The position numbers were made by a program, and so were the translations under genes. 64,000 nucleotides of DNA from Malacoraja senta (lineage: Eukaryota): contig JAXLNO010000246.1 in assembly GCA_038087875.1 (NCBI GenBank), positions 186,001 to 250,000 on the forward strand. Direction: 5' to 3'. Shown here piece after piece: positions 5,969-55,366 of the stretch. Each line of letters opens with the position of its first letter. Positions within the stretch are counted from its first letter, which is position 1. The notes beneath the pieces are model-generated. The model saw only the letters and a program-made list of their open reading frames with translations. It was not told the origin of the DNA and searched no databases.

Positions 5969-6020
5969 ATGATTCTGTTCATCTTGTTGAGTTTCTTCCG
6001 CGTACAAGGGGCTCAAGCAG
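5969..6020 (+). CDS. MHC class I-like exon 1 (signal peptide)
   Basis: ATG at 5969 gives MILFILLSFFRVQGAQA plus 1 nt, then a consensus donor CAG|GTAAGT at 6021. Joins in frame to GPHTLIYYY (AQA|GPH resembles the class I cleavage site before GSH). Confidence 0.8.
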
Positions 6021-6289
6021 GTAAGTTAATGATTCTCATTGTATTCGCTACTGGCTAAAAGCGTCTTGGCTTTATCTCACACTTGACCGGAGGCGACTGA
6101 GTTTAAAAAAGCGCGCAATACACATTCAGTCTGGTTCATGCGGACGTTAAAAGGGTTTAATCTCCACTGTTTCAGTACAATCCAGACTGGAATTTCTGCA
6201 TTGATTTGCACAATGCCCCGTTTCCTCTGTGGAAGAAGGAACTGCAGATATTGGTTTAAACTGATTTTAACTCGTGTAAAACAAACAGG

Positions 6290-7200
6290 AGCGAGGCATT
6301 CACTAGGGTTTCCTCGCTGCTCCGCTCTTGCTCTCCCTTCCCCCCACATTCGTAACAAGGACAGAGTCCCCCTTGTCCTCACCTTCCACCCCATCAGCCG
6401 TCGCACAGCATATGATCCTCCATCATTTTTTGCCACCTCCAACAGGATCCCAATACTGGCCACATCTTCCCATCTCCACCTCTTTCTGCTTTCCGTGGAG
6501 ACCATTCCCTCCGAAATTCCCTGGTCAACTCGTCCTTTTCCACCCAAACCACCCCCTCCCCAGGTACTTTCCCCTGCAACCGCAGGAGATGCAACACGTG
6601 TCCCTTTCCCTCCCTTCTCGACTCCATCCAAGGACCCAAACAGTCTTTCCAGGTGAGGCAGAGGTTCACTTGCACCTCCTCCAACCTCATCTACTGTATC
6701 CGCAGTTGCAGGTGTCAACTTCTCTACATCAGTGAGGCCAAGCACAGGCTCGGCAATCATTTCACTGAACTACTCCGCTCTGTCCATCTTAACCTACCTG
6801 ATCTCCTGGTTGCTCAGCACTTCAACTTCCCCTCCCATTCACAATCTGACCTTTCTGTCCTGGGCCTCCTCCATTGTCAGGGTGAGGCCCAGTGCAAATT
6901 GGAGGAATAGCACCTCATATTTCACTTGGGTAGTTTACACCCCAGCGGTATGAACATTGACTTCTCTAACTTTAAATTGCCCTTGCTTTCCCTCTCTATC
7001 CCCTCCCCCTTCCCAGTTCTTCCACTAGTCTTAGTGTCTTCAACTACATTCTATCTTTGTCCCATCAACTCCCCTGACATCAGTCTGAAGAAGGGTCTCG
7101 ACCCGATAGGTCGCCCATTCCTTCTCTCCAGAGATGCTGCTGGCCTGCTGAGTTACTCCAGCATTTTGTGTCTACCTTCGAGTTAAACCAGCATCTGCAG
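6290..7200 (+). mobile_element. Penelope-like element 3' part (RT C-terminus, GIY-YIG endonuclease, terminal repeat)
   Basis: RNKDRVPLVLTFHP; FTCTSSNLIYCIR..LLYISEAKHRLG..QHFNFPSHS is GIY-YIG-like. Followed by the CTGAAGAAGGGTCTCGACCC tail. Confidence 0.85.
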
Positions 7201-7444
7201 TTCTATCCTACACAAAGTGCATTGTTTGACAGGTTCAAGTTTATGGCCAAATTCCTCGTATGTTGCAAAACATACTTGGCGAATAAAGTGTGATTCTGAT
7301 TCTGATTGATCTGATTCTGAAATGTGGGAAGAGAGCGAGGCACTAGTACAATGCAAAATCATTAAAAGATTAGCACACACTGTGGATTTTGCTATTGACT
7401 GAGTGACAACTCTTAGCTCCAAACGTGCGGTCGTCACGTTTATG

Positions 7445-7790
7445 TTGTTTAGTAGTGATGTGGCCAAGTTTGCAGATGATGCTAAAATAGGTGGAGGGGC
7501 AGGCAGTGTAGAGGATGCAAGGACTTTGCAGAAGGACTTGTTCGGGTTAGGAGAGTGGGCAGAGAAGTGGCAGATGAAATCCAGTATAGCAAAGTGTGGA
7601 GACATGCATTTTGGTAATAAGAATAAAGGCGTAGATTATTTTACAAATGGAGAGAGAATCCAGAAATCGGAGGCACACAGTGACATGGGAGTGTTGGTGC
7701 AGGACTCCTAAAAGGTTAATTTGCAAATTGAATCGGTAGTCAGGAAGGTGATTTATATCAAGAGGACTGGAATACAAAAACAGAAAATGC
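7445..7790 (+). mobile_element. CR1 LINE RT fragment
   Basis: DVAKFADDAKIGG..LQKDL..GEWAEKWQM..HFGNKN. Confidence 0.8.
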
Positions 7791-8413
7791 CGCCCGATTT
7801 GTAAGAGTGTCAAAGGTCACAGGGAGATGACAGGAGAACGGCACTGAGAGGGAACGATAGGTCAGCCATGATTAAATTGTGGAGTAAACTCGATGGGCTG
7901 AACAACCAAATTCTGCACCTTTGACTTATGAAGTGAGTCAAAGTTCAGAACATGAGGGATGATCTTTTTATTTCTTCCCAGACTGGTGTGTCTGGAACCA
8001 AAATTCACAGTTTAAAAATAAGGCTTCAGACATTCTTATGGCACCAAAACATGGTGACACTTGTGTATTGCCTAGGTTAGGTCTGCTATATGATTTTACC
8101 GTTGTATGCGAAACGAAGCATTTCACTGTACCTAGGTGCATGTGACAATAAAATATCATTGAATCGTTGAATTCAGTGCAGTAATGAGATGAAATCTTTT
8201 CACCCAGAGGGTAATTAGTCTTCCAAATTCTCTGTCCAAGAAGGCTGTGGGCATTCAGTCAATCAGATGCTTGAGGCAGGGATAGGAAGATGCTTGGATA
8301 CAAAAGGAATTCTGGGTTAGTTCGGGAAAATGGTTGTCTGCTGGAGGATCGGTTATGATCTTATAGAATATCAGAGATTGGGAACAAAGGATGAATGGCA
8401 ACATTTTGCTGAT

Positions 8414-8690
8414 ACATAGATACATAGATACATAGAAATTAGGTGCAGGAGTAGGCCATTCGGCCCTTCGAGCCTGCACCGCCATTCAATACGATCATGG
8501 CTGATCATCCAACTCAGTATCCCGTACCTGCCTTCTCTCCATACCCCCTGATCCCTTTAGCCACAAGGGCCACATCTAATTCCCTCTTAAATATAGCCAA
8601 TGAACTGGCCTCAACTACCCTCTGTGGCAGAGAGTTCCAGAGATTCACCACTCTCTGTGTGAAAAAGTTTTTCCTCATCTCGGTCTTAAT
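8414..8690 (-). mobile_element. CR1 LINE 3' end with tandem-repeat tail
   Basis: Encodes KTEMRKNFFTQRVVNLWNSLPQRVVEASSLAIFKRELDVALVAKGIRGYGEKAGTGY, near-identical to the end of ORF 30459..31598; (GATACATA)n tail. Confidence 0.9.
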
Positions 8691-11294
8691 GTTAGGTTTG
8701 ATCCCACTCCACAAGAGAATCCAGAAGGAAAGAGAGTATAGAGTGTTCAATTGTCATATGTGCTGACTACAAAACAATGAAATTCTTGTAGCAGCTTAGC
8801 AGACCTGTAAGACAAAACAAATAGATAACATACTAAAAATCCAGTTAATTGATAATCCCAATACATGTGCAAAAACACCTCGAATGCTTAGTTTAACCAA
8901 AGACAGTCCATAGGTCTACAGGGTCCGACTCGACACATTACCTATCCATGCTGCCTGATCTGCTGAGTTACTCCAACACTTTATTTTGTTCATTAATCAT
9001 AGCTGAGTGTAGTGTAGTTCAGGGTTCAATATACGGGAAGATTTTAATGATCACATTCCAACATGCATCTCTAGAGCCAAACAAAACAATGACATTCTCC
9101 TTTGATGGTAATAATCTAATTTGGTGAAAGGGGAAACAGGCTTAGATATAAAGAATAACATTTATAGCAGTTCCAATGTAGGAAAATGCTTCAATGAGAT
9201 TCGTAAGAATATTATTCTGTAACATTTTACTTCGAGCAGTATAATGGCATGACATGACAATTAGCAAAATAAACATTTAAGGTGCATCTTAAAGGAAGAA
9301 TAAGAGGAAGGGATATTTAGAGAGCAATTCTATTACTTAGGCCTGCTCTTCAGATGAAATACTTAAATTTGTGAATAATCAGGAAGTTATACTGCCCGGT
9401 TCATCGTGGGTTCTGACCTCACCACCATCTAAGGGATCCACACGAGACGCTGCCTCAAAAAGGAAGGCAACATCATCCCCCTGGCCACGCTTTCATTACC
9501 TCCCACCATGGGGAAGAAAGTATAGGTGTCTGAAAACCATGACAACCAGGTTCAAGAATAGCTTCTTCCCAACAACTATCACGCACTTGAACAATACACA
9601 ACGCTAACCTCAACTGTGAAATTGTATGGACTGTATGCATGCCGAGGGAGGAGCTGCGTAGGAAGGAACTGCAGATGCTGGTTTAAACCGAAGATAGACA
9701 CAAAATGCTGGAGTAACTCAGCGGGTCCGACAGCGACTCTGGAGAAAAGGAATAGGTAGCGTTTCAGGTCGAGACCATTCTTCAGACTGATAGTCAGGGG
9801 AAAGGGAAACGAGAGATACAGGCGGTGATATAGAGATATATAAGAACAAATGATTGAAAGATATGCTTTGAATGAAAGAGCTGTTGGTCTTAGATATTTA
9901 AATACAATGATCAGAGTTTAAAATCTGAATATTTTTCAATCAGAAAGATGATGGGTGAATGGGATGGAGCAAGTTAGCACAATGATGACAAAGTTTGAAG
10001 AAGGGCCTCAATCTGATACATCACCCATTCCTATTCTCCAGAGATGCTGCCTGACCCACTGAGTTACTCCAGCATTTTGTGTCTAACGCTAAGTGCTGGA
10101 GTAACTCAGCTGGTCAGGCATCATCTCCGGAGAACGTGGCTAGATGACGTTTAGGGTAAACACCCTTCCACAGAGTGAAGAAGGGGTCTTGACCCGAAAC
10201 ATTTATCCATCATCACATATCCATGATCTCCAGGGATGCTGCCGGACCCACTAAGGTGCTCCAGCACTTTGCGTCTCTTTGTGAACCAACATTTGTAGTT
10301 CCTTGTTTCTTCAATGTAAATTGACTGTCATTTGTAGGTAAGTGATAGAATCTGGAGAGAGATGATGGGAACTTGCAGAGAATAAGAATGAGTTGATCAA
10401 GAGCAAGAGTTTAATTGTCATCTGTACTGGCAATGGAACAATGAAATTCTTATACACATATTAAATATACAACAATCAATGGTAAAATAAATTACTATTA
10501 GTTATACTCGGTAACCAGACCATAACAGTGGAAAAACAAACGTCCTTACTGCAACCAAAATAAAGTCCATCACAGATCAGAGTTGTTGAGGTAAGGTTGT
10601 GGTTCGTGTTGTGCAGTGTTTAAATGCCTGCTGCTCATGAGAAAAAAGCTGCTCTTAAACCTGGAGCTAACAGTTCTCAGGCTCTCTAACCTCAGAGACA
10701 GTTGATTGGTTCAACGGTATTTTATATGTGGCAAGTACCGAGGTACAGTGAAATTCATTATTGTATACAGTTTAGTACAAGTATCACTATATATAAGTCC
10801 TTAGATACATCTTAGATAAGCATCTCAGATACAGTACAAGTGTATAGCAGTAGTACGCTGAGACAGTATACAGTGTCGCCAGTTTATGGTGCCATTTTCA
10901 CGTCCCAGTTGTTGTAAGTGAGGGTTCTTGGCCTGACCATGAGGCCCATTGTCCTGGTGTTGTTGAGGGTTGACCTGTCCAATCGAAGCTGTGGTGTCCT
11001 CTACTGCTGCAGGGCGCAACTGGTCCATGTGCCCGGCCTCTTGGAGCAGCGCCTGGAACAGCCAAGTCCCAGGCTGCTGTAGGGCCTCCAGCACCCACTC
11101 CACTGTTGAGGCAGTCCATTCCCTCCCGCAGCCTGTCTGCCTATAAGCCATCCATCTGACTCCTTCCACTCTGGGCGGGAGAGCTGGGCCTTCCAGGTGG
11201 GTCCTCCATCCACGGTCCACAGCGAGCAAGAACTCAGTCCGTGATGGATGGGCCAGATCTTCCGGGCGAATTCCTGGTCCAGGGTGGCCGGCCC

Positions 11295-11400
11295 TGAGAG
11301 TATGGCCAGGGTGGTGTGGGTCTCTGATGATATTAGCTGTCTTTCTGAGGCAGCACCTCCTGTAGATCTATTCAATGGTGGGATGGAATGGTATGGAATG
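11295..11400 (-). mobile_element. Rex1/Babar-like fragment
   Basis: Reverse strand reads IYRRCCLRKTANIIRDPHHPGHTL. Confidence 0.6.
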
Positions 11401-13009
11401 AGTGCTTCATGGTCAGAGTGGACTGTCGGCTGAAGGTTCTATTTGTGTGTCTCTGTGACTATATGTGTGGAGAAGGCTTCGAAAGAGTAGGTGAAGGGGC
11501 ATTCTAAATGATGGGATGCACATATCATTGTAAACGGGGCCCTCAAAGTATTGATCTGTAAAATGCTAAATCTGCATTTCATTGCAGTGGACTAGAGTTT
11601 AATGGTAGCCAATCCACATAAACACTTGTTCTTGTCTATGGCGAGTTTTGCAGACTGCTCCAATTACAATAAATTAATATATAAAGAGAGTGGGATACTA
11701 GAAGGTACATTCCTTTTATCCATAGATGCTGCCTGTTCCACTGCATTACTCCAGTATTTTGTCTCTATCTTTGGTGTAAGCCAGCATGTGCAGTGCCTTC
11801 GTACACACACAAGAAGGATCCCAACAATGGGTTCTGTTTGTATGGAGTTGATACGTTCTCCCTGTGACCGCTCGGCTTTCCTCTTGGTGCTCAGAGGGCA
11901 GTGGAGGCCGGTTCTCTGGATACTTTCAAGAGAGAGCTAGATGGGCCTCTTAAAGATAGCGGGGTCAGGGGATATGGGGAGAAGGCAGGAACGGGGTACT
12001 GATTGGGGATGATCAGCCATGATCACATTGAATGGCGGTGCTGGCTCAAAGGGCCAAATGGCCTACTCTTGCACCTATTGTCTATTGTCTATTGTTTCCT
12101 CCCACGTTCCAAAGACGTGTGTGTTTGTAGGTTTATTGGCCACTGTAAATTGCCCTGAGTGTGTAGGATGTGAAACAGGGAAAACATAGAACTAGTGTAT
12201 GGGTTGATGGTCAGTGCAGACTCAGTGGGCAGAAAGGCCTGTTTCCATGCTGCATCTGTTAAAAAAGATTGGTGAGCATGATACCCGAATTCAAACGTCA
12301 CAGAGAAACCAACACATTTTAGTTTGTACAGACAAGAACACCCAAGAATGTTTGTATTCAAACAGACCAACAAAGTAATAAAGGTTTGCAGGTACAAAGT
12401 TCAACAGTGAGCATTGCTTAATCTAATCTTATACTTAGAACATTGCAGACGTAGGGCATTCAGCACAGGGAGGCTGTCCCATTGAGGGGGACGAGAACAA
12501 ATGGGGAACTGTGGGGATGGGGGCGCCACTAAGAACAAAGGGGGAACTGGTGGGGATGGGGTCTGCTGCCATGTGTGGCAACAGGCAGTGGATAGGACTG
12601 TTCGGTACTTTGTAACTTTGTCTGCGCCAACACATGACGACATTTTTGTACAGCCTAGGTTCAGTTTAGTTTATTGTCACGTGTCGAGGTACAGTGAAAA
12701 GCTTTTTGTTGCTTACTAACCAGTCAGTAGAAAGACAATACATGATTACAATAATGTTTAATGCAAGGTGAAGCCAGCAAAGTCCGGTCAACGATAGACC
12801 GAGGTTGCATGGAAAACAAAGCATTTCACTATACCCAGGTACCCTGGGTACATGTGACAATAGAGTATCATTCAATCATTCTTTCATTCATCAGTCCTAT
12901 TCCTCACAATTTATTTTCCATATAACACAGGCACCCATGGCCGCCAATGCTCCTTTGATTTTCTTTGCCATTTACGTGTGTTGATCTGGCTAATGGGTTT
13001 TGTGAAGTA

Positions 13010-13300
13010 CAGCACAGTGGTGCAATGGTAGAGAGTTGCTGCCTCATAGCGCCAGAGACCCAGGTTCAATCCTGACTTCAGGTCTGTCTATGTGGCGTTT
13101 GCACATTTTCACTGTGACCGAGTGGGTTTCCTCCAGGTGTTCCGGTTTCCTCCCACAACCCAAAGGCATGCAGCTTTGTAGGTTAATTGGCCTATGTAAA
13201 TTCCCCTAGTGTGTAAAGAGTGGACGAGAAAGTGGAATAACTAGAGTGAATGGGAGATCAATGGTCAGCATGGACCCAGTGGGCCTGTTTCCGCTATAAC
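13010..13300 (+). mobile_element. HE1-like V-SINE
   Basis: Head CACAGTGGTGCAATGGTAGAG...GGTTCAATCC, V-domain and tail. Confidence 0.75.
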
Positions 13301-13309
13301 CATATAATA

Positions 13310-13585
13310 TAACCATATAACAATTACAGCACGGAAACAGGCCATCTCGACCCTTCTAGTCCGTGCCGAACACGTATTCTTCCCTAGTCCCATATACCTG
13401 CGCTCAGACCATAACCCTCCATTCCTTTCCCGTCCATATAACTATCCTATTTATTTTTAAATGATAAAAACGAACTTGCCTCCACCACCTTCACTGGAAG
13501 CTCATTCCACACAGCCACCACTCTCTGAGTAAAGAAGTTCCCCCTCATGTTACCCCTAAACTTCTGTCCCTTAATTCTCAAGTCA
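13310..13585 (-). mobile_element. CR1 LINE 3' end
   Basis: KFRGNMRGNFFTQRVVAVWNELP; (AACCATAT)n-like tail. Confidence 0.8.
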
Positions 13586-14649
13586 ACCCTTAACTCTAAA
13601 CTAACCTTAAAAACCACTAAAATTACTGATTTATTGCAAGTAGCTAGATTCAAAACTATTTAAACTACTGAAGACGGGTCCTGACTCAAAACATTACCTG
13701 TCCATTCCAACCACAGATGCTGCCTGACTCACTGAGTTCCTCCAGTATTTCATTGCTCAAGATTCCAACATGTCTCGATATTAACTACTTCTTTGAATAA
13801 CACTGTTGTTTGGTATTTTTATGATATTTTTACGGTAGAATTGCATGCTGAAATGTTCATACCTTGAACATAGTTGAAAAGGATAGTAATTCATTAATGC
13901 ATGCAGGAATAGTATTATTAAAATTGACTTTAGTAAAATACCGAATACACTGGCAATATGCAGTAGGTCAGGCCGCATCTGTGGGCAGGAAAGCAGAATG
14001 TTTTAGGCCAGAGACCCTTCAGGACTGGGAAGGAGGAGAAAGAAGAAAGGAGGAACTGAAGATGCTGGTTAACAAAATAAGACACAGTTTTGGAATAACT
14101 CAGTGGGACGGGCAGCATTACTGGAGAGCGTGGGATGCTAAGGTTTTGGGTCAGGACCATTCTTCAAACTGATTGTGGGGGTAAATAAAGCTGGAAGAGA
14201 GGAGGGGCAGAACAAAGTATGGCAGATGATAGGTGATAGATACCAAAATGAGAGAGCAGTCCTGAACTACTATCTGCCTCATTTGTGACCCTCGTACTTT
14301 CTTTGATCGGACTTTACTGGCTTTACCTTGCACTAAATGTTATTCCCTCATCATGTATCTCTACTCTGTAAATGGTTAGTTTGTAATCATGTATTGTCTT
14401 TACGCTGACTGGTTAGCAGGCAACAAAAGCTTTTCACTGTACCTCTGTACACGTAACAATAGACTAAACTAAAATGTTGCAGAGAGGATTTTCCGACAAC
14501 AAAGGCCAGAGATGAAAAGACAAAAGGAATTAAAGAATGGTGAATTGTGAAAATAGAGGAATGGATGAACGGGACGGGGGAGGGCAGAAATAGATGCAAG
14601 TCCAGATTGGGCACAGGGGAGGGGAAGAAATGGGGGGGTAGGTTACCTA

Positions 14650-15530
14650 AAATTCTCATCACTTCCCACACAAACCATAGCATCCCAGGTAATCTCCCCT
14701 GCAACTGCGGATGTAACATCTGTTCCTGTACCTCCTCTGTGGTCTGCCTCGAGGGACCATAGCAGTCCTTCTAGGTGAGACAAGAGATTCATGTACACCT
14801 TCTCTAAACTGATCTATTGCATTCCCAATGTGGCCTCCTGTATATCGACGAGACCAAGCATTGACTCCACGACCATTTCGCCGAAACTGGATCTGCCATG
14901 GACTTCTGCACTGGATCTCCTGGTTGCTAACCACTTGAACTTCCTTTCCCATTGCCGTATTTACCTTTCTGTCTTGGGTCTCCTCCATTGCCAGTGTGAG
15001 GTCAATTGCAAACAGACCCTAATATTCTTCTTGGGTAGCTTTCAACCTGATGGTGTGAACATTGAACTCGCCAATTTTAGGAAACCTAAGCCCTACTCTC
15101 CTCCTCCTCCTCCTCCCCTTTCTCCCCCACACCCATATTTCTCCCCACCGTTGCCCCCCTCCCCTGTAGCCCACCTGGACTTGCACCTATTTCCCTCCTA
15201 TCCCCCTTCCTTCTAAATTTGCCATTTGCAACCTTTCAATTATTTGGTTGCGCACCTTCTGTATTTTATCTCTGGCCCTTGTCCATAATCTCCCTATCAA
15301 CTCCCCCCATTACCGCCTCCTCACCTATGTTCACCTATTACCTGCCCCTCCTTTCATCCAGTTTCCTTCATCTCCCCCTTCCCCTCCCCCTCTACAATGC
15401 CCATACCACCCCCCCCCCCAACCTCCCACAATGAGTCTGAAGAAGGATCAATTCCACAACACCACATATCCATGTTTTCCAATGATACTGCCTGACCTGT
15501 CGCGTTGTCCCAGCACTTTGTGTCTTTTTC
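14650..15530 (+). mobile_element. Decayed Penelope-like element 3' part
   Basis: Similar to 6560-7200 (FMYTFSKLIYCIP, ANHLNFLSH, GSFQPDGVNIEL) with a degenerate tail. Confidence 0.7.
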
Positions 15531-16342
15531 TAGGAGGAAAAAAAGAAGCACGTTAAGCTGCAGGAAGTGTGGGGGAGGGAGAATGTCTTTCAATGATAGA
15601 CACAGAAAGCTGGAGTAACTCAGCGGGACAGGCAGCATCTCTGGAGAGAAGGAATGGGTGACGTTTCGGGTCGAAACCCCTTTTCAGACTTTCCAAGCCT
15701 TATCTGGTAGAATTTAATGAGATAGACATCTGTTTGTGGTCGAATGCATTATCTGAAAGCTGAATGTAAATTGTACTGTTAAGGCTTTACAATACGTCAT
15801 TGGTAAAAATGTGCATGGATTGAGCATATGGGCTTAATTGTCCTCCTGCTTTGAAGGAAAGCTCACAGCATGTCTCAATTGCATGTCAACCTAGTATCAT
15901 AAAAACAACTGCTGTAGGAACTCAGGTGGTAGAGGAACATCTTTGTAAGAAGGAACTGCAGATGCTGGTTTACACCGAAGATAGACACAAAATGCTGGAG
16001 TAACTCAGTGGGTCATGCAGCATTATTGGCAAAAGGAAATAGGTAACATTTCAGGTTGAGACCCTTCCTCACATCTTCAAGAGTCAAGAGTATTTTATTG
16101 TCATATGTCCCAGATAGGACAATGACATTCTTACTTGCTGCACAACAGAAGGGAATGTAATTTGGAGGGAATTAAATTTTTCACAATGATTTTAACTGGT
16201 ACAGTAAGTCACTTCTATTATTCATAAACCATTGTAGTAATATTTTCAAAACAATATTTGAAATGGCATAAGACCAAGACTGCATGCGAAGTCATCTTCT
16301 GATACAGTTTAGGATTTGGCAGGAAATGCTAAAAATATGGTT

Positions 16343-17705: not shown

Positions 17706-17734
17706 ATGTCAGAGGGTGAAGACTGCGCCAGCAC

Positions 17735-17960: not shown

Positions 17961-18016
17961 AAATTTCTGTGTTCGATGACTTTATTCTCCTCAGTGATTT
18001 GGTGCACATGTTAATA

Positions 18017-43065: not shown

Positions 43066-43239
43066 AGTTGTACGGAAAGACAAATATTCACGCTGTAGTT
43101 CAGTGACAAGTAGAGTTCTGCAGGGATCCGTGCTGTGACCCTTGCTACTTGTGACATATATAAATGACTTGGACCCTGGTGTTCAGAAATTACCCAGTCA
43201 TAACAATTAATCAAATAATGATTTTTATTTTTATTTCAG

Positions 43240-44154: not shown

Positions 44155-47100
44155 GTTTAAAAAAATATATATATTTTTATTAGAAGCATGTGCATATCAT
44201 AATACAAACATTTCTTATATATCTTCCTCGACGCATCCGGCAACAACATCGACGTGTACACTGACGTGGTGACGTCATACGTCCGCTACTGTGAAGAACT
44301 GTGCGTCCCCTACAAAACTGTCACAATACCCAGTAATGGAAAACCCTGGTTCAACAAGGACATACAACTTCTTCGCAAAAAGAAAAATGCAGCCTACACC
44401 AATGGAAACATTGATCAATACAAAATAGCAAAATATGAACTCAGGTCTGCAATACGGAAGGCAAAATTAGCTTATTCAAAGAAATTGTAACAACAATTTA
44501 AAACTCATAATTCAAGAGAGGTCTGGAAAAATCTACAGAAGATGACGGACTACAAAACACGTCCTGTTCCCATCTCAGATGAGGATCCGGACTTACCGGA
44601 AAAATTGAACACTTTTTATGCAGGCTTTGATAATGTCACCCCGCCATCCATGCCTCCCCCCCACCTAACTCAGCACCATTTACCATCTCTGAGGAGGTGG
44701 TGAGGGCGGCCTTCAAAAATCTTAATAAAAGAAAAGCGGCAGGGCCAGACGACCTCAGCCCCGCTGCTCTTAACCACTGTGCAGCTCAGCTGGCTCCTGT
44801 GTTCACCTCCATCTTTAACACTTCCCTCAGCCAATGTAGAGTCCCGCAGTGTTTTAAGGCATCCATTATCATCCCTGTGCCCAAGTCCTCCAAGGTGAGC
44901 TGTCTGAACGATTTTAGACCTGTTGCACTAACATCAGTTGCCATGAAGGCCTTTGAGCACATAGTCCTCACCCATCTGAAAACATACACTGTCCCCATCA
45001 TGGACCCTTTTCAATTTGCATACAGCGCCAACCGGTCTGTGGAGGATGCTATCAACCTAGCTCTTCACTACTCCCTACATCATTTGGAATCACCGAACAC
45101 TTATGCACGCATCCTGTTTATAGATTTTAGCTCGGCCTTTAATACTATACACCCAATTAAACTCTACAATAAACTGTTGGACATGGGCATTCACCTAGCC
45201 ATGTGCCATTGGATTTTACATTTTCTTACAAACAGACAACAAAGAGTCAAGGTGGGTGAAAAACTCTCCAGCCCTCTGACTATCAATACAGGAGCCCCTC
45301 AAGGGTGCGTTCTGTCACCTCAGCTCTTCTCACTTTACACCAACAACCTCACATCTCAATACAGCTCAGTTAAAATTTTCAAATATGCAGATGACACGAC
45401 AATAATTGGCCTCATCTCAGACAACAATGAATCACAATACCATCAAACAGTGGACAGCGCAGTCAAATGGTGCGCAGAAAACAACCTCCAGCTTAACACC
45501 TCAAAAACCTTAGAAACCATCATAGATTTCAGACGCAAACAAAACCTCAAACCCGCGGTCCATGTCAACTCCCATCCCATAACCTCCACGAACTTATTTA
45601 AGTTTCTGGGCACCTATATCTGCAATAATCTAAAATGGCACATCAATGCTGACCACATCATTAAGAAAGGACAACAACGCCTATACTTCCTCAAACAGCT
45701 CAAGAAGTTCAGAGTCCACAAACACCTCCTGGTACGCTTCTATCAATCCATCATTGAAAGCATCATCACCTCCTCAATCACAGTCTGGTACGGAAACACT
45801 GACAGTCACTCACTACACAGAATACAGCGCATTGTCTCCAAGGCCTCTAGGATCATCAACTCTCCCCTCCCCTCAATCCATTCCATTTACCTCCAACGTA
45901 CCTCAAAACGGGCAACAAAGATCATCTCGGACCCCTCCCATCCAGCAAACCACCTTTTTCAGTCTCTCCCTTCAGGGTCACTTGCCTTAGGTCACTTGCT
46001 ACAAAATCCACCCATTTTAAAAACAGTTTTCTTCCCCTCAGCAATAAGAACACTTAATTCCCTCCAATAACTTTTTGACTTTGATGTATACAGTGTCTTG
46101 TCTATGGTTTTTGTCTGTTCTTTTGCACTATGTATTGTTGGTGAGATTTGTGATTTGTGATGTGCTTTATTATTATTGTTGTTAGTGTTAATGTGCTAAA
46201 GCAGTACCATCATGTACCGAACCCAATTACCACCAACCCTGGTCGTGTGGCAAATAAAGTTTCTATTCTATTCTATTCTACTTTGCTAATAGGTGGGAAT
46301 CCAGCTATCAAAATAATAGTGGTCCTCCTTGATCAATTGTATATTAAATCTGCTTCTATTTAGTTTTGTTTTATAGATAGAAAGTGAGAAATTTAAAAAA
46401 AGGCATAATAAAGAAGAATGGAATAATTTACCAATAATACAACTTTGGAGATAAGTCCGTAAGTTATAAAACATAACTATTCATCTAATCCTGAGCTTGG
46501 ATTTCAGTCAGATTCCTATGCTGAACCAATTTACCCTTTCAAAAAATCAATAAATAGAGACCTTATTCTATTAAATAATTCAAGTTTGTCAATTAAGACA
46601 AGTCTAGTTCTTTCCAAATGTAAGGTCTCTGACATTTCCATAATCCACATTTTGATTGTGGGGGTTATAGGACCTTTCCAAAATTTTAATATTAATTTTT
46701 TCCCAATTATTATACTATAATCAAGAAAGTTTCTTTGGTTTATTGTAAGTCTTAGGCTTTGTTCTGACATTCCTAATATTATTAGTTTTGAGTCGGGATC
46801 CAATTGGGTATTGACTACTTCAGAAATTATTCTGAAAATGTCCTTCCAGAAATTTTTGATTTTTATACAATTTACAAAGGTATGAGTTAAATTAGCCTCT
46901 AAATGCTGGCATTTATCACAAATAGGAGAGATATGTGGGAAGATTCTATTTAATTTTGTTTAAGAATAATGTAATCTATGTAATACTTTAAATTGTATTA
47001 AGGCATGTCTGGCATTTAACGAGCATTGATGTATATATTGTAGACTTTCGTCCCAAATATCTTTCGTTATGGGTTGGCCTAATTCATTTTCCCATGTGTG

Positions 47101-47588
47101 TCTATATAAATCCGTCGGCGAGACCTCACTATCTAAGAGGGTATTATAAATATGAGATATTAATTTTTCTGTATTAGGATGTTTATTCAAACATTCATCA
47201 AGGATTTCTGGTTCCCTAGTTCTGTAATCTTGTGTATTTGATTTAATGTAATCTCTAATTTGTAAATATCTGAAAAAGTTATTTGAGTGTGGTCCGTAAA
47301 TCTGTTGTAACCCCTGAAATTAAAGAAAAGTGCCTTTCCTATAAAGATGTCCCATCTTTTTAATTCCTTAATTTTTCCATTGTGTAAAGCCTTTATCCAA
47401 CATGGAGGGTTTGAATAAAGGGTTGTTTATAATGGGGAGACAGAGTGATAAATTATCCAATTTTAAAGTCTTTTTTAATTGTTTCCAAATTCGTATACCA
47501 CTATATATTATAGAATTTTCACTATAGGTTTTTTAATGCAATTTTGTGGGAGCAAACATAATCGAACCAATTTCAAAAGGCAAACAGT
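44155..47588 (-). mobile_element. L1 LINE 3' part (diverged subfamily), itself interrupted by a Rex1 element
   Basis: DCLPFEIGSI, MNKHPNTEKLISHIYN and MDPDSKLIILG parallel the L1 at 40.3-41.4 kb; bounded by the CTTTCACTATTT TSD. Confidence 0.85.
44220..46280 (+). mobile_element. Rex1/Babar LINE, 5'-truncated, with 457-aa open RT ORF (44697-46070)
   Basis: KAAGPD, DFRPVALTS, LFIDFSSAFNT, GAPQGCVLSP, KYADD and KKGQQRLYFLKQLKKF (DUF1891-type); (TATTC)n tail. Confidence 0.9.
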
Positions 47589-48159
47589 CTTTCACTATTT
47601 TGTATGACTCAATGAGGTCCCCCCTTATTCTTCTAAACTCCAGCGAGTACAGGCCCACTGCCATCAAATGGTCATCATATGTTAACCCATTCATTCCTGG
47701 GATCATTCTTGTACACCTCCTCTGGACACTCTCCAGAGCCAGCACATCCTTCCTCAGATATGGTGCCCAAAATTGCTCACAATGCTCCAAATGTGGCCTG
47801 ACCGGCGCCTTATTGAGCCTCAGCATTACATCCCTGTTTGACAGGGAGAAAGTGTAATTGATGTATTTCATATTAGTTAACCATGGATTTTCTTGACCAC
47901 AGTTGACAGCCCCTAATGGGATTGCATGTCTATCACACATCTCAAAAGAGCACAGCATTAAGCTTCGAAGGGCAAAATTTACACGAGTTGTGCAGGTCAA
48001 GTGTTTTTTTGCACAGAGAGAGCTTGATACCTAGAATGCGCTACCAGGAGTGGTGGTAGAGGAAGACATGATAATGGTGCTTAAGAAGGTTTTGGACAGG
48101 CTTGTGAATGTGCAGCGAATACAAGGATATGGATCACATGCAGGCAGTGGAAATCAGTT

Positions 48160-48460
48160 TTGGTTTAGTTTAGAGATAGAGTATGGAAACAGGATCTTTG
48201 GGCCACTGAGTCTGCACTGACCAGCAATTGCCCATTCACTATTTTTGTCCTACAAGCTAGGGACAATTTACAGAAGCCAATTAACCTACAAACCTGCACG
48301 TCTTTTGTATTTGGGAGGAAACCGTAGCCCCCAGAGAAAACCCACAGGGTGACAGAGAGAACGTACAAACTCCGTCCAGACAGCACTCTAGTCAGGATCG
48401 AACCCGGGTCTCTAATGCTGTAAGACAGCCATTCTATCACTGTGCCACTGTGTTGCCTTA
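48160..48460 (-). mobile_element. HE1-like V-SINE
   Basis: Reverse-strand copy. Confidence 0.75.
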
Positions 48461-48699
48461 GTTTAACTTGGTATCCTGTTCGACATGGACATTGCAGGCT
48501 GAAAGTCCTGTTCTTGTACTGTTCTATGTTCTATATATTCTCATTGGACAGGGCAGAGTTTTTCACTCCTCCAGCCTCCATGTTGAATACTTACTCCCAG
48601 TTTAAATCTGATTCAATTAGTCAATCCATTTCTCCCCCCCCCCCTCCTGCCCTGATCCCCATTCTATATCTTGAAGTAGTCATTCCCTTTTTCGCTCCC

Positions 48700-49140
48700 T
48701 GGTCTGTCTACTATCCCCACAACTTTCCTCTACTTTCCTGTCTTGGTGCATGCAACATCTATCCATTTACCTCTTCCCTTCCTACTGTCCATAGACCCAG
48801 GCAGTTCTTCAAAGTGAAACAGCGTGAAACACTTGCACTTCCAGTCAAATCTACTGCATTTGGTTTTCATGACGTAATCTTCCACATCGCATCAATGAAA
48901 CAAATTGAGTGGCTGCGTTCTGGAGAACCCGCATTCAATCCATGGGACTTTCTAAGATTCCTAATTCCTGCCACTTTAATTCTCCATTCAACACCCACCA
49001 TGATCCATCCATCTGTACCTCTTACACTAGGATAACAAGGGTGAAAGTAACCTTGAGGACCAACAACTCAGCTTCTACCTTGACATGTTGCAGCCTTTCA
49101 CACTCAATTCCACGTTCAACAAGTTGTATTCCCTGTCGAT
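48700..49140 (+). mobile_element. Highly decayed Penelope-like endonuclease fragment
   Basis: Residual similarity to 6600-6970 (FFKVKQRET, CATTTAATTCTCCATTC). Confidence 0.5.
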
Positions 49141-50714
49141 AAAAGAACTGGTTATTTCATAAGTTCATGTTCATTTATTGTCACATACACCAATTGGTGT
49201 AGTAAAATTCACTGGCCAGGTCAGTCATACAATTTAAAAAAGCAACAGACTCAAAAACACATTTTGACATAAACATCCATCATAGTGACTCCTACACATT
49301 CCTCACTGTGATGGAAGGCGAAAATAAAGTTCCAAGTCCTTCCCTTGTTGTTCTTCCTTGGTCGGGGGCCTCGAGCCCCCCGTTGAACGGACGGTCTTGA
49401 GTCCCGTAGCCGGCGGCGTTCGGGCCCTCCGCGTCGAGGTGATCAGCTCCCGCATCGGGGGGATTGCCAGCTCCCCTGCGCCGGGCGATCGAACCTCGCG
49501 TCGGGGCTGGACGAACCTTCTGTGGCGTTGGAGCTCCCGACTAGCCTCTCCCGAGACTGGGAGCCCTTGATGGTAAGTTCGCAGGCCGCGTTGGGAGCGA
49601 TCCCAGGCAAGGGATCCGCTCCGATGGTAAGTCCACGCCCCGTGGTGGGGCTCACGACGGTCCTTTTCAACTGTTAAGTTGAAGTCAGAAAGAACAGATG
49701 CAAGAAGTATGAAGAAGGACACCAAGCTGAAACATTACGTAACCATGTCTTCCAGATGCTGCCTGAGCCACTGAGTTACACCTGCACATTTTTGTGTTTT
49801 TTTTAAATTACAGTAAAGTTATCCACCTGCAAAATCAGGACAGCCTGACCTACTTGAGTACTGCAGTATGTGCTGCATTTTATATAACTCTGTTTAGTTT
49901 CATGCATGCAGAGATGCAGTGAAATGGTTTGGATGGAACAGCAGATGCTGGACACCCCGTCCCTTCTCTCCAGAGATGCTGCCTGTCCCGCTGAGTTACT
50001 CCAGCTTTTTGTGTCTGTCTGCAGTGAAATGGTTGTTCTGCATTCTCCCCAGTCAAGTCATACTGTACATAAGTACAATTCGTCCTCTTCTGGAACAGCA
50101 CGCAGAGATCCACCACATTCCAGGACTATCTTGCAGCTTCCAAGTCTCTGAGAAGTCTGATTTTGCCCTAAGGAAATACCCAATTTCACATTTTCTCATG
50201 TTAAGGCCCAGTGTCATAACAGCACTGGATTGATGAAGTAGAGGCGCCTGCCTCAGTTTAAGTTTTTCTGTTTCAAGATTGTGATCAAACCCTCGTCACT
50301 GGAACTGTGTCGCAGTGCCACCCATTACGTATCAGTCCCAATTATCTTTCAACATGCTGGAATCACTTGTTTTTTATCCTTTTTAGACTTTTTTCATGAA
50401 TTGTTCAGCTTAAACAGTTATGCTACAGCAGTTAAGCGCAGCTACCACTTAGTTCCAGAGACGTAACAACACAAGAGATAGTGTTGGAAGAATGATCAAA
50501 CTCACACATAGTGGTTAGAATCCATAGTCTTTTATTAGTAACTCTGCAGAGGAAACACAAGGTGCTTTCTTCTCAGCATGCTTACTACCAGTCTACCAGA
50601 GAGAGAGAGAGAGAGATGTCTAATAAGCCTGTGGGCGGAGCCACAGTATGAGTGACACTAATCTACAGATAGGCACAGGGATAAGTTTCGGTTTATTATT
50701 GTCACGTTTAGTTT

Positions 50715-51000
50715 CGAGGTACAGCATGAAAATAGGCCTTTTGGCCCACTGAACCTGTGCTGACTAACGACCACCCAAATATTAGTTCTATCCTACACAC
50801 TAGGGACAATTTACAGAAGCCAAAAAACTTACAAACCTGCACGTCTTTGAATGTGACGGAACTGTAGCACCCGGAGATAACTCACATGGTCACAGGGAGA
50901 ATGTATGAACTCTATATAGACAGCACCCATTGTCAGGATTGAACTTTGGTCTGTGGTACTGTAAGGCAGCAACTTTCCCTCTGCGCCACTGTGCTGCCCA
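50715..51000 (-). mobile_element. HE1-like V-SINE
   Basis: Reverse-strand copy. Confidence 0.75.
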
Positions 51001-52302
51001 TGTACTGAGGTAGAGTGTAAAGCTTTGTTTTGCATGCTATCCAATTGGATGAGGTAACAAAATACATATATATGATCATCAAACTCAAGTACTGTAGGTA
51101 GAGCAAAGGGGAAGGTACAGAGTGTGGCATGTAGTTCTCAGCAATGTAGCACAGCAGTTCCATTAGATAAGTGTTTCGACACGAAACGTGACACATTCCT
51201 TCTCTCCAGAGATGCTGCCTGACCCGTTGAGTTACTCTAGCATTTTGTGTCTATCTGCGGTTTAAACCAGCATCTACAGTTCCTCCCTACATAGTTCTAT
51301 AAACAAAGTCCACTGTCTTTAATGGGGTAGTGGTCAATAGGACAGTACCCTAGCTTATGGAACGATCATTCAGAAGCCTGATTTTCTCCTCGGTTATCAA
51401 GTTTCCGAGTAAGCCATTTGGTCCTCTAACCTGCCCACCATTCAATATGACCATGGCTGACGTTCCTCAGGCATCAACTCCTGTTCGATATCAGTTCCTC
51501 ATTGCACTCAGTTCTCCAATTTAAGTTTAATTAAGTTAACTACCGCCACATTAAATGCTTCCAATGATTTTGTCTTCACAAATCTCTGGCGCCAGAGAAT
51601 GACCACACTCTGCAAAAAGAGATTTTGTAAACAAATGACTGGTCTCTTTTATCTCTTATTGAAGAGGAGTGAAAATACTGCCAATTTTAAGCTTGTCCCC
51701 TCCCCAATTGACCCTCATTTCGTAACTTGTCAATTATTTATTATTGTCAATAATATGCCCTAGTGAAAAGATTTGCCGATGGTATTAGTTTATTATTGTC
51801 ACATGAACTGTGATATAGTCAAAAGTTTGTCTGTGTGTTATCCAATCAGATCATACTACACATGTGCAATCAAGCCATCCACAAGTAGAACAGTGCAAAG
51901 AGAAAAATTCTCAGAGTGCAGAATATCGGGTTACAATATCATAGCATTACAGTTACAGAGAAAGTGCAGATCAAAAAGAGTTGCAAGGATCACAATGAGA
52001 TTGGTTGGAAGATCAGGGCAACATCTTATCTTACATGAGAACCATTCAGTAGTCCAATAACAGTGGGGAAGAAGCTGTTCCTGAATTTAATGGTACGTAC
52101 TTTCAAACTTTCTTGTGCACTGTCTTAACAGGGAGCGTGCGATCCCTTTTAAACCACGTGGTTGGTTGATGGTGCCGAAAGAGGCAAAATGGGGCAGATG
52201 TGGACAGTGACTTGGTTGTTGTAGTGGACTGAAGAATATTTTGTGGTGGGTGACTGTGCAAGTTTTACTGAAGATGAAAATAACCATCTTACTGTCTTGT
52301 AG

Positions 52303-52569
52303 TTTCCCCTGAGGTCACTCTCGCTGCCCGCCCTGATGATCATTCAGTCCTGTACTGCACTGTGTTTGGATTTTACCCACCGGCCATCAATGTCAGCTGG
52401 TTGCAGAATGGTCAACATGTCTCTGAGACCAAATCTTCTGGGGTCATACCCAACAACGATGGAACATATCATCTAAGGTCTGTCCTTGAGTATGATCCGT
52501 ATGATGGGAAACAGTATTCCTGTCATGTCGATCACAGCAGCCTGCCCGGTGGGAAGACCATCATCTGGG
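52303..52569 (+). CDS. MHC class I-like exon 4 (alpha3, Ig C1-set domain)
   Basis: Acceptor TCTTGTAG| and donor |GTAAGA; 267 nt. VSPEVTL..LYCTVFGFYPPAINVSW..PNNDGTY..YSCHVDHSSL..W carries the C1-set signature. Confidence 0.95.
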
Positions 52570-52869
52570 GTAAGAACGTTAAATATTCTTTCATAGATAA
52601 TCATTATCTTCTGTTGTTTCCATTTTAATCATCATGAATACATCCCATATTCCAAGATGCTTAAACTTTCTTTGTTTAGTGGTGTTGCTCTAAGTAATCA
52701 CGTAATCAGCACCCACTCTCCGCATGAGCAGAAGACTTTGTCAACAGAACATTTATCAAAAGTAAATAAATAACTAATATATAAGGAAGGAGTATTTGAG
52801 ATTCTCAGTGGTGGAACTGAAATCTATGAAAGGTATGTTTAAATAAAAAATGAATCTTTCCTCATGATG

Positions 52870-53400
52870 TGATTAACAACAAGGCACTGGGGGAGTACAT
52901 GCCCCAATCTGAATCAATGGTCCGAAGTGGAAATGATTGAGAGCTTCATGTTCCTTGGCATGAATTTATCCAATATTCTGTAAAGGACTGACCACATAGC
53001 CAAGGAGGCACACCAACACCTCTACTTCCTCAGGAGACTGAGAATATTCATCATGTCTCTGGTGACTCTAGCAAACATCTATAGATGCCGCTAGAGAAAG
53101 CATGTTGTTGGGTTGCATCACATCTTGATTTGGGAACTGCACTGCCCAAGACTGCAAGAATATACAAAGAGTTAAAGATCATCACACAGGCCAGACTTCC
53201 CACTATTGGCTCAATCTACACTAGGTTGCCTTGGAAAACGAGACTTATCCCAACCTTCCTCCTTCTTGCTCCCATCAGGCATTAGGTACAGAAAGTTGAA
53301 AATATGCACTGCCAGACTCAGGAACACCCCCTTTCCACCTGTTAACAGGCTTCGGAAGGGTCCTTCCATAATGTAGGTTTAATGCCCGATTCACCTCAAC
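52870..53400 (+). mobile_element. Decayed Rex1/Babar fragment
   Basis: AKEAHQHLYFLRRL-like segment. Confidence 0.55.
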
Positions 53401-55258
53401 CTTATTGAACATTGAACATTGTCCATGGAACTGATGTGTTACAATGCTGAGAACTATATTCTGTACTCTGTATCCTCCTCTTTGCTCTATCTATTGTTTT
53501 TGAGTTTGTATTTATGTATAGTTTTATAATTTGTTTGGATAGCATACAAAACAAACTTTGCTCATATTTTGAAACATCTGGCGTTAATAAAACTAAACCT
53601 AATGAAGTAAGTTCCATGACGCAAGTTACAGATTCAGCAACGAAAAATATAACTGCCTGACAAACAGCGATCGTAGAAGTTTGATTCCAAGTATGCTGCA
53701 CTAACCTACACAAATGCTCACTTTTGAAGATTCCCTCGAACAATGCACAACTAAGGAATCTGATGTTTCACTCTGAAGACTGTTGACATACCCCAGAACT
53801 TAATTTCCAACCTATCTATGTATCATCAGCAATCTAGGCTACAGCGCCAACAGTCCCTTCATCTGCTCTTAATACCAACGATAAGTAGTTCACTTTCTTG
53901 CATTGATTCCCAACCTGCAGTTGCAGTTTCCCAACCAGAACACTCCTTTAAGACAACTCTCTGCTTGCTCTTAATTGTTTTTCCATTCATGCTAATTATT
54001 ACCCCCAATGTCATAAGCCATGTGCCTTTGCATCACTTGATCAGATATCTTATGAAAATCCAGATATTGTGGCGACATCTGGTGGTCAGGCCACTTATTG
54101 CTAGAACCCTCGTCAGGGGAGCTGGGACTATCACGTGAGTGACAGGGTTTTGGTGGGAGTTGGTGATGAGTTAATCGCCAGTCAACTGGTGTGCCCGATA
54201 ACAACGGCAGGAACTTTGCTCAAGTCCTTACTAAACGCGAGTGGGCCAAAACTGTATTTCTTTAAAAAAACATTGATTTGTTCACGACGTTTGGATCTCT
54301 ACAATATATTGTATTTCTTTTGTTTCTCATTCCAATTTTGTTACCTATTCTGCTTTTCCATCATTTTGTTTATGAATTTTAGGCTTTTCACACCTGCTGC
54401 TCGAATATACATTGTCTACGGGTTCCTGTTGCATTTTCAAAGAGTTCTAATCAATTTCTCAAACAAAGTTTGAAGAAGGGTCCCAAAACGAAACGTCACC
54501 TGTCCATGTGTAAGAAGAAACTGCAAATGCTGGTTTACACCAAAGATGGACACAAATTGCTGGAATAACTCAGCTGGTCAGCCAGCATCTCTGGAGAAAA
54601 GGAATAGGTGATGAATCCATGTTCGCCAGAGATGCTGCCTGTTCCGCTGAGTTACTCCAGCATTTTGTGTCTATTATGTATATTCTTTCCACTGACTGGT
54701 TAGCATGAAACAAAAGCTTTTCACTGTACCTCAATACATGTGACAATAAACTAAACTAAAGCTTTTGTGTAAATCAGTATCTGCATCTCTTTCTTTCTAC
54801 AATTTTCCTGATAATGCCCTGATAATGCACTTTATTGTTTTGTTATTACTTAAATGTTCTGCCATTATTGAAAGGAATCCAGCATTTTCCCCAAAACAAA
54901 TGTTAGTTTATATAGGGTTAAAGCTTTCTGCTTTCAATTCACCTTCTTTCATGAATTAAGTTGTGGCTGTGATGGTGCCATATATCATAGAGTTGTACAG
55001 AACATATATTGTCCCTTTGCCATGCTGCAGAACTCCGTGATTCAAAACACCATATCATCTTATATACCTTGAAAAGCCCCAAATATAGACACAAAATGCT
55101 GGAGTAACTCAGCGGTCAGGTAACATCTCTGGAGAAAAGGAATAGGTGGCATTTCGGGTCGAGACCCTTCTTCACCCTGAAGTCTTCAGACAGTGCCCAT
55201 CTATTTAGCTGCACAGCTTAACAATTGATTTGTAAAATTATGCATTCTTATTTTTCAG

Positions 55259-55366
55259 AAGGAAATAGGAAGAAAGACAGGCACATAGGCCTTATTGCCG
55301 TGTGTGTGCTGATATTGCTGGCTATTGTCTTGGCAGTAATTGTTTTGTGGAGAAAAAAGAGGAGAG
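55259..55366 (+). CDS. MHC class I-like exon 5 (connecting peptide and transmembrane)
   Basis: Acceptor TTTTTCAG| and donor |GTAAGA; 108 nt. EGNRKKDRHIGLIAVCVLILLAIVLAVIVLWRKKRR is a hydrophobic helix followed by a basic stop-transfer cluster. Confidence 0.9.

What the first reader, a model, noticed from the sequence alone, without database searches (positions are those of the whole stretch)
5969..55366. Divergent nonclassical MHC class I-like gene spread across about 50 kb of transposon-filled introns
Seen: five phase-1 exons with canonical splice sites; introns of about 18.9, 18.0, 8.8 and 2.7 kb. The leader, alpha2 second half and TM exon are invisible in the ORF track. Established: cartilaginous fish carry classical UAA and several nonclassical class I lineages (e.g. 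UBA, UCA, UDA, UEA). Inference: the sequence looks far from a classical allele and may belong to one of these or to an unnamed lineage. I cannot place it without a tree.
Basis: partly seen in the sequence, partly recalled or inferred. Interest (0 to 1): 0.75.

Follow-up and report, generated by a model that had tools for sequence, protein, structure and literature searches.

The report
Frameshifted skate UGA class I gene
This is a real skate copy of UGA, a shark-and-ray MHC class I-like gene that is already named, already crystallised and reported to be CD1-like, and this copy is broken by a genuine 2-base deletion.

Summary
Introns are 18.9, 18.0, 8.8 and 2.7 kb and carry reverse-transcriptase ORFs.

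The gene is not an unnamed lineage. Every exon matches PDB 9CH4, "shark nonclassical MHC class I, UGA", far better than any other solved chain. In a tree the gene sits inside the skate branch of the UGA clade (100/100). It is 92% identical to the annotated Amblyraja radiata protein.

The alpha2 exon is 274 nt, not 276. Four skate loci and one read-derived contig carry two more bases after 43388. Contigs from two other runs share the deletion, so it is not an assembly error. A stop follows at 43413-43415, so this copy is most likely a pseudogene or null copy.

The YQNI-tail exon seen in relatives is not in the window and probably lies past its 3' end.

This scan already found frameshifted, intact and truncated UGA copies on other DNA of this genome. 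Those notes are unchecked and claim 100 or more copies. I could confirm only that another skate, Rhinoraja, has at least 10 UGA genes. Interest is low.

The parts
5948..6020 (+). Exon 1: leader peptide. ATG at 5948 (MREVVREMILF...) or at 5969. Donor GT at 6021. Ends in phase 1.
   Evidence: 88% identical to the Amblyraja leader; 90% nt identity to L001, L003 and L004.
6021..24952 (+). Intron 1, 18.9 kb, repeat-rich.
   Evidence: many TE-like ORFs.
24953..25213 (+). Exon 2: alpha1 domain, 261 nt.
   Evidence: phmmer E 1.1e-36 to 9ch4_A, next best 3e-9; 86% identity to Leucoraja P0001..
25214..43239 (+). Intron 2, 18.0 kb, with retroelement ORFs at 30459-31598 and 39088-40740.
   Evidence: Pfam RVT_1, E 1.8e-20 and 1.5e-40.
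43240..43513 (+). Exon 3: alpha2 domain, 274 nt instead of 276. Both disulfide cysteines are present (FGCEV, HDCVD).
43388..43389 (+). Site of the 2-nt deletion. Relatives read gag/gaa + two bases + cttcaaag here.
   Evidence: a 2-nt gap against L001-L004; the X3 contig has 'AC' put in behind 43388, while the X4 and X6 contigs cross the site without a gap.
43413..43415 (+). Premature TGA in the entry frame (...PIAELQREMGQE*).
43514..52302 (+). Intron 3, 8.8 kb, with a reverse-transcriptase ORF at 44697-46070.
   Evidence: RVT_1, E 5e-33.
52303..52569 (+). Exon 4: alpha3, an Ig C1-set domain, 267 nt.
   Evidence: C1-set E 3.3e-20. E 8.1e-35 to 9ch4_A; the loose end of the X1 contig behind 43513 matches this exon's first 30 nt.
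52570..55258 (+). Intron 4, 2.7 kb.
55259..55366 (+). Exon 5: connecting peptide, transmembrane helix and RKKRR stop-transfer, 108 nt. Donor GT at 55367.
   Evidence: (96% nt identity to the Amblyraja TM exon).
55367..64000 (+). Start of the last intron. The relatives' tail exon (DYQNIPPNQNVPC* in Amblyraja) is not found here.
Evidence: In Amblyraja this intron is 6.8 kb.

Best explanation
The window holds one skate copy of UGA. UGA is a nonclassical MHC class I lineage of sharks and rays. Its shark member has a solved structure (PDB 9CH4), and a review reports, as a personal communication, that it binds lipids as CD1 does. An intact UGA chain would carry a leader, an alpha1/alpha2 ligand-binding platform, an alpha3 Ig domain that would pair with beta2-microglobulin, a TM helix, and a short tail with a Tyr-x-x-Ile/Val endosomal sorting signal. 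This copy keeps the first five exons with good splice sites. It has lost 2 nt in the alpha2 exon after 43388, so translation runs into a TGA 25 nt later. The product would stop inside the first alpha2 helix segment, lacking the rest of that helix, alpha3 and the TM. The stop lies well upstream of later exon junctions, so the mRNA should be a target of nonsense-mediated decay. The copy is therefore most likely a pseudogene or null copy, broken recently. Shown here: the exon structure, the lineage placement, the reality of the deletion and its absence in other skates. Inferred: loss of function, beta2m pairing, lipid binding and endosomal routing of the intact relatives.
For: Lineage:
- All four exon pieces hit 9ch4_A best: E 1e-36, 7e-13, 5e-9 and 8e-35.
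- The title of 9CH4 is 'shark nonclassical MHC CLASS I, UGA'.
- Stegostoma P0172 aligns with 9ch4_A over all 268 residues at E 7e-170.
- The window nests in the skate subclade of the P0172 clade at 100/100.
- It is 92.4% identical to Amblyraja XP_032898133.1.

Break:
- There is a 2-nt gap against four skate loci.
- A contig from run X3 has AC inserted behind 43388, which restores ...AETFKEKWDKNEK.
- Contigs from runs X4 and X6 cross the site with no gap. They differ from the window at 43248, 43328 and 43356, and X4 also at 43501. They are therefore other haplotypes or copies with the same deletion.
- At 43248, 43328, 43356 and 43501 those contigs carry the base shared by L001-L004. Three of these window-specific changes are nonsynonymous. 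The pattern fits drift after the break.

Splicing:
- An RNA contig from X1, Leucoraja-like at 43465-43467, runs from 43414-43513 straight into exon 4 sequence.
- Full-length 334-aa products in the Logan-derived collection show the same exon order.

Function of relatives:
- PMC12562908 and PMC10751288.
- A YxxI/V tail is present in skate and shark UGA proteins.
Against: Apart from the deletion the copy looks healthy. There is no other stop, all splice sites are intact and both disulfide pairs are kept. Changes unique to the window are 5.5 nonsynonymous to 4.5 synonymous, an omega of about 0.3, like the intact relatives. So the break is either young or the test lacks power. No RNA run of the window's own species was found, so expression and decay of this copy are untested. 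Assembler contigs drop rare variants, so an undeleted allele or copy in the same species is not excluded. Lipid binding by UGA rests on a personal communication in a review, not on data I could read.
Confidence: 0.8

Rival explanations
1. The gene is functional and the 2-nt gap is an assembly or consensus error.
For: The rest of the gene is intact and omega is low.
Against: Contigs from two independent runs (X4, X6) differ from the window at other positions and still carry the same gap-free sequence across 43388/43389. The site is not a homopolymer.
Confidence: 0.03
2. It is a segregating null allele, or one dead paralogue, of a gene that still works in this species through an undeleted allele or another copy.
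For: The break looks young. UGA is multicopy in another skate: at least 10 distinct proteins lie on one Rhinoraja chromosome. Unchecked notes of this scan report both frameshifted and intact alpha2 exons elsewhere in this genome.
Against: Only deletion-bearing contigs were recovered from X4 and X6, although contigs hide minority variants. This reading does not change the verdict that the copy in this window is broken. It mostly overlaps the best explanation.
Confidence: 0.12
3. The locus yields an in-frame isoform that skips exon 3 (leader-alpha1-alpha3-TM) and so escapes the frameshift.
For: All exons are phase 1, so skipping exon 3 keeps the frame. A Leucoraja model (P0169) skips a whole domain exon.
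Against: No read shows an exon 2-exon 4 joint. A class I chain without alpha2 has no ligand platform. Splice sites of exon 3 are normal.
Confidence: 0.03
4. It represents a new, unnamed class I lineage.
For: Pfam finds nothing in alpha1. The MHC_I score of the alpha2 piece (27.1 bits) is below the 28.3-bit threshold, so the gene looks very divergent when read alone.
Against: It sits with 100/100 support inside the clade holding the 9CH4-like protein. Annotated orthologues exist in at least 13 shark, ray and skate species.
Confidence: 0.02

Closest known systems
Shark UGA (PDB 9CH4, 'Crystal structure of shark nonclassical MHC CLASS I, UGA', released 2026-03-18)
   Same: Same lineage. Each exon's best PDB match is 9ch4_A. 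The domain order is the same. The lineage-typical Cys in LDGCEI is shared, as are both disulfide pairs and the NET/NQT glycosylation site at the end of alpha1.
   Different: The exons look roughly 60-70% identical to 9ch4_A by eye from the alignments. No tool figure exists for the window itself; the Amblyraja orthologue model is 54-58% identical. This is the skate branch, with a 50-kb-plus gene body, and this copy is frameshifted.
Skate UGA orthologues: Amblyraja radiata XP_032898133.1, Leucoraja erinacea XP_055521885.1 and XP_055486429.1, Rhinoraja longicauda XP_078272153.1 and nine more
   Same: They are 89-92% identical in protein. Exon borders are identical, and introns are long (genes of 31-98 kb).
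   Different: All of them have a 276-nt alpha2 exon and an open frame. NCBI names them only 'class I histocompatibility antigen, F10 alpha chain-like'.
The linked sister lineage (P0005 type, annotated 'MR1-like'; probably the UFA of Verissimo 2023)
   Same: It is sister to UGA at 99/98 support. It lies on the same contigs in seven species, including Pristis, Mobula, Stegostoma and Leucoraja.
   Different: It is only about 33-37% identical to Amblyraja UGA over the full length, and about 45% in alpha1. It has an extra stretch between alpha2 and alpha3 and a different tail. That it is UFA is my inference, not tested.
Mammalian CD1
   Same: It is reported to resemble CD1 in function (lipid ligands, PMC12562908). 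The relatives' tail motif YQNI is a YxxPhi endosomal signal of the CD1 type. That CD1b ends in YQNI is from my own knowledge.
   Different: It is not a CD1 family member by sequence. It is 23% identical to a lemur CD1b-like protein, which sits on a long separate branch. UGA keeps the alpha2 disulfide of class I. The model's next-best fold matches after UGA are HFE, ZAG, chicken YF1, MR1 and classical chains, not CD1 (low-confidence model).

Membership tests
MHC class I-like heavy chains | An alpha1 and alpha2 platform followed by a C1-set Ig alpha3 and a TM, one domain per phase-1 exon | tested here: met
   Searches give the exon and domain layout. C1-set E 3e-20, and MHC_I 27.1 bits on the first half of alpha2; dozens of class I chains are hit.
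MHC class I-like heavy chains | Conserved disulfides in alpha2 (C101-C164) and alpha3 (C203-C259) | tested here: met
   FGCEV / HDCVD and LYCTV / YSCHV are seen. The alpha2 pair is split by the frameshift.
UGA lineage (elasmobranch nonclassical class I) | Falls in one clade with the protein crystallised as UGA (9CH4) | tested here: met
   title; P0172 against 9ch4_A, E 7e-170; clade 100/100 including the window.
UGA lineage (elasmobranch nonclassical class I) | Short cytoplasmic tail with a YxxI/V motif | tested here: inconclusive
   The motif is present in skate and shark UGA proteins. The tail exon is not within the window.
UGA lineage (elasmobranch nonclassical class I) | MHC-linked, next to UFA, UDA and UEA (PMC10751288) | not testable with these tools
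   The window holds no other gene. In relatives UGA shares contigs with the sister lineage.
UGA lineage (elasmobranch nonclassical class I) | Binds lipid-like ligands and pairs with beta2m | not testable with these tools
   This rests only on a review statement. The AF2 model of the orthologue was too poor to judge the groove (pLDDT 65).
Functional (expressed, open-frame) gene | Uninterrupted reading frame through all exons | tested here: not met
   Exon 3 is 274 nt and a TGA lies at 43413-43415. The deletion is confirmed in independent runs.
CD1 family | Groups with CD1 by sequence | tested here: not met
   The window's UGA orthologue is 23% identical to a lemur CD1b-like protein. That protein lies outside all elasmobranch clades on a long branch.
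Classical class I (UAA) | Groups with peptide-presenting class I | tested here: inconclusive
   Solved shark and teleost classical chains score only E 1e-9 on alpha1, against 1e-36 for UGA. No labelled UAA sequence was in my tree, and the other elasmobranch rows lack the alpha2 cysteines.

The most novel reading that the evidence does not exclude
The deletion-bearing UGA unit is not a lone dead gene. It is one member of a large skate-specific amplification of this CD1-like gene, with tens to hundreds of copies, many sharing the same 2-nt deletion. This would contrast with the 'single- or low-copy' description of UGA in the literature. The amplification would then have copied an already broken gene, alongside a few intact ones.
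Probability: 0.5. Interest if true: 0.45.

Novelty: new member of a known kind. Interest (0 to 1): 0.22.

Why it matters
UGA and its sister lineage are the reason some immunologists now date CD1-type, non-peptide antigen presentation to the first jawed vertebrates. A skate copy adds nothing to that argument by itself, because annotated orthologues and a crystal structure already exist. The mildly useful points are three. First, this copy is a confirmed pseudogene or null copy, so it should not be counted as a functional class Ib gene in annotation. Second, skates carry many UGA genes, at least 10 in Rhinoraja, although the lineage has been called single- or low-copy. Third, these genes are stretched to 30-100 kb by retroelements, so automated pipelines miss or mis-join them. 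An example is the Leucoraja models that fuse UGA to a 7TM receptor gene.

Tried and rejected
- **Literature on 9CH4:** a full-text search for '9CH4' found nothing relevant. Searches for UFA/UGA papers found only the 2023 MBE paper and the 2025 review. The MBE supplements do not mention UFA or the Amblyraja accession.
- **Tail exon:** regex, tblastn and blastn with the Amblyraja tail exon found nothing in 55367-64000.
- **Structure of the orthologue:** the model had mean pLDDT 64.9 with a poor alpha1 helix. I used it only to retrieve PDB titles, not to judge the groove.
- **RNA evidence from the window's own species:** none was found. The 'RNA?' runs hold relatives' sequence.
- **Copy number through the protein collection:** a search with the genomic alpha1 ORF found nothing. 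The depth of 227 for the X4 contig is compatible with many copies. It is ambiguous, because the contig includes 75 nt of a repeat and the library type is unknown.
- **Relaxed selection on the window branch:** it is not visible (omega about 0.3, 10 changes), so there is no power.
- **Other genes in the window:** tblastn found no GPR139-like gene, which is fused to UGA in Leucoraja models, and no second class I gene.
- **Handling of the break:** the conceptual protein used in scripts carries X at the break, and no letters were put there.
Full report
**Observation**

Reading the sequence confirms five + strand exons with AG acceptors and GT donors, all in phase 1.
- Leader: 5969-6020. An in-frame ATG at 5948 gives MREVVREM..., the start used in the Amblyraja and Leucoraja models.
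- Alpha1: 24953-25213.
- Alpha2: 43240-43513.
- Alpha3: 52303-52569.
- Connecting peptide and TM: 55259-55366.

Introns are 18,932, 18,026, 8,789 and 2,689 nt. Three long intron ORFs are reverse transcriptases (RVT_1), so "transposon-filled" is fair. Alpha3 is a clear C1-set domain (E 3e-20). The first half of alpha2 touches Pfam MHC_I just under threshold. Alpha1 hits no Pfam model, which explains why the gene looked so divergent to a reader without tools.

**What it is**

Each exon piece, searched separately against PDB sequences, has the same best hit, 9ch4_A. The E-values are 1.1e-36 (alpha1), 6.7e-13 and 5.1e-9 (the two alpha2 pieces) and 8.1e-35 (alpha3). The next-best class I chains reach only about 1e-9 on alpha1. 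The fold searches gave the entry's title: "Crystal structure of shark nonclassical MHC CLASS I, UGA", released 2026-03-18.

A phmmer scan of 1.84 billion representatives with alpha1 found only three proteins below 1e-30. The best, 86% identical, is a Leucoraja erinacea model whose 90% cluster also holds Amblyraja radiata XP_032898133.1. A search with that protein recovered a conserved family in skates, sawfish, manta, stingray and seven sharks. The Stegostoma member aligns with 9ch4_A over all 268 residues at E 7e-170.

I built a 55-row maximum-likelihood tree, using the window's conceptual protein with X at the break.
- The window lies in the skate subclade (100/99).
- That subclade lies in the batoid clade (100/99).
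- The batoid clade lies in the UGA clade (100/100).
- UGA is sister (99/98) to a second conserved, physically linked lineage annotated "MR1-like". This is presumably the UFA of Verissimo et al. 2023, though I could not verify the name.

The window's protein is 92.4% identical to Amblyraja's. Synonymous distances are 0.09-0.14 to three skate species. The source is therefore a skate, roughly as far from Amblyraja and Leucoraja as a different tribe.

**Known status**

PMC10751288 mentions UFA as an unpublished CD1-like lineage in the class Ib cluster. [quoted passage not shown] It cites this as a personal communication. The lineage is therefore named, solved and annotated in relatives.

**The break**

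Exon 3 is 274 nt. An alignment with the same exon from Amblyraja (L001), Rhinoraja (L002) and two Leucoraja contigs (L003, L004) shows a clean 2-nt gap in the window after 43388. All four relatives have 276 nt and read ...HDPIAE(P/S)FK(E/K)KWDKNEKMNRYFK. In the window the entry frame reads ...PIAELQREMGQE and stops at TGA 43413-43415. The rest of alpha2 (FKEKWDKNEK...TRK) is in the +1 frame.

Public contigs laid on 43100-43650 settle whether this is an artefact.
- A contig of run X3, a different skate, has "AC" inserted behind 43388, which restores the frame.
- Contigs of X4 and X6 cross the site without a gap. They differ from the window at 43248, 43328 and 43356 (X4 also at 43501), so independent DNA carries the same deletion.
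- At those four positions the X4/X6 sequence has the base shared by all other skates. The window-specific states, three nonsynonymous and one synonymous, therefore arose after the deletion, as expected for a drifting dead copy.

Over the whole CDS the window's unique changes are 5.5 nonsynonymous to 4.5 synonymous. That is no different from intact relatives, but only 10 events are involved. The break is therefore recent or the test is underpowered. There is no other stop and no damaged splice site.

**Splicing**

No RNA run of the window's species was found. A contig of the "RNA?" run X1 matches Leucoraja at 43465-43467. It covers 43414-43513 and continues with TTTCACCTGAGGTCACACTCGCTGCCCGCA, which matches the start of exon 4 at 27 of 30 positions. 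Full-length 334-aa Leucoraja-type products in the Logan-derived collection show the same exon order. Exon borders are identical in four skate loci.

**The missing end**

Skate UGA proteins end ...WRKKRR-DYQNIPPNQNVPC, encoded in Amblyraja by a separate exon 6.8 kb after the TM exon. Shark UGA tails read GYNVI or DYNTV. So a YxxI/V endosomal-type signal is conserved in the lineage. No such exon is present in 55367-64000. It most likely lies beyond the window, and the intron may be lengthened by the element noted at 58929-63940 (s1-141539, unchecked).

**How it would work**

By homology, an intact UGA chain would fold with beta2m and bind a hydrophobic, non-peptide ligand. It would cycle through endosomes by its tyrosine motif and be shown to T cells. 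All of this is inferred from the review and from sequence features, not tested here.

This copy would give at most a 170-residue secreted fragment, or 163 residues from the ATG at 5969. Its mRNA should be degraded, because the stop lies upstream of at least two more exon junctions (established NMD rule).

**Copy number**

Earlier notes of this scan, on other pieces of the same genome, describe several UGA copies.
- Copies with a 2-base deletion: s1-140082, s1-140130.
- Copies lacking alpha2: s1-140238, s1-140284.
- An intact alpha2 exon: s1-140240.
- "At least 100 copies": s1-140284, s1-140285.

These notes are unchecked and I could not reach other parts of the genome. What I could test:
- Rhinoraja longicauda has at least 10 distinct UGA proteins. 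I located five of these genes, at 26.4, 30.3, 35.1, 39.7 and 41.4 Mb of one chromosome, on both strands.
- They form a species-specific clade with mean 96% pairwise identity.
- Leucoraja has two loci or haplotigs, and Pristis has three copies.
- The X4 contig over exon 3 has a word depth of 227, against 2-14 for neighbouring repeat contigs. This is compatible with many copies but ambiguous.
- The window itself holds one copy and no other gene.

**Verdict**

This is a frameshifted copy of a known lineage, so interest is low. The only part that might deserve a follow-up is the skate-specific multiplication of UGA, including copies that share the deletion.

Noticed in passing
Rhinoraja longicauda CM130181.1: L002 (26.43 Mb), L005 (30.31 Mb), L008 (35.09 Mb), L007 (39.67 Mb), L006 (41.36 Mb): UGA is multicopy in this skate. 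At least 10 distinct annotated proteins (90-99% identical to each other) belong to it. The five genes I located are spread over 15 Mb of one chromosome on both strands. All ten form a species-specific clade. The literature calls UGA single- or low-copy.
   Followed up: partly
L001:87707-87745 (Amblyraja); proteins P0154, P0164, P0160, P0172, P0175: UGA tails carry a conserved Tyr-x-x-Ile/Val motif: DYQNI in skates, GYNVI and DYNTV in sharks. This is the layout of the CD1-type endosomal sorting signal. It is encoded by a tiny exon several kb after the TM exon.
   Followed up: partly
L003 (Leucoraja JAMYXN010000161.1); proteins P0152, P0169, P0151: NCBI models in Leucoraja fuse the UGA exons to a downstream GPR139-like 7TM receptor gene, giving 574-663 aa 'uncharacterized protein' isoforms. 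This is probably a read-through annotation artefact. No such receptor gene is in the window.
   Followed up: partly
window 43100-43566 (run X4): The only X4 contig spanning exon 3 and both intron flanks has a mean word depth of 227, in a run of 1.2 billion letters. This hints at high copy number in that organism. It could also come from the 75-nt repeat at its 5' end.
   Followed up: no
proteins P0192, P0197, P0205, P0206 (alignment A2): A large multicopy elasmobranch class I clade picked up by the searches lacks both alpha2 disulfide cysteines (IRSVEV in place of FGCEV; VFVQ or ELVE in place of DCV). It is another nonclassical lineage that I did not name.
   Followed up: no
window 36238-37916 (+): A run of ORFs (MVKPRCVLCAKVLSHESMKPSKLKIHL..., then about 330 aa in shifted frames) looks like a decayed DNA-transposon transposase. 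Two of its ORFs gave no Pfam hit at E 0.001 or better.
   Followed up: partly
window 43248, 43328, 43356, 43501: At these four exon 3 positions the window differs from every other skate sequence and from the deletion-bearing contigs of X4 and X6. They are private changes of this copy that arose after the frameshift (three change the amino acid).
   Followed up: yes
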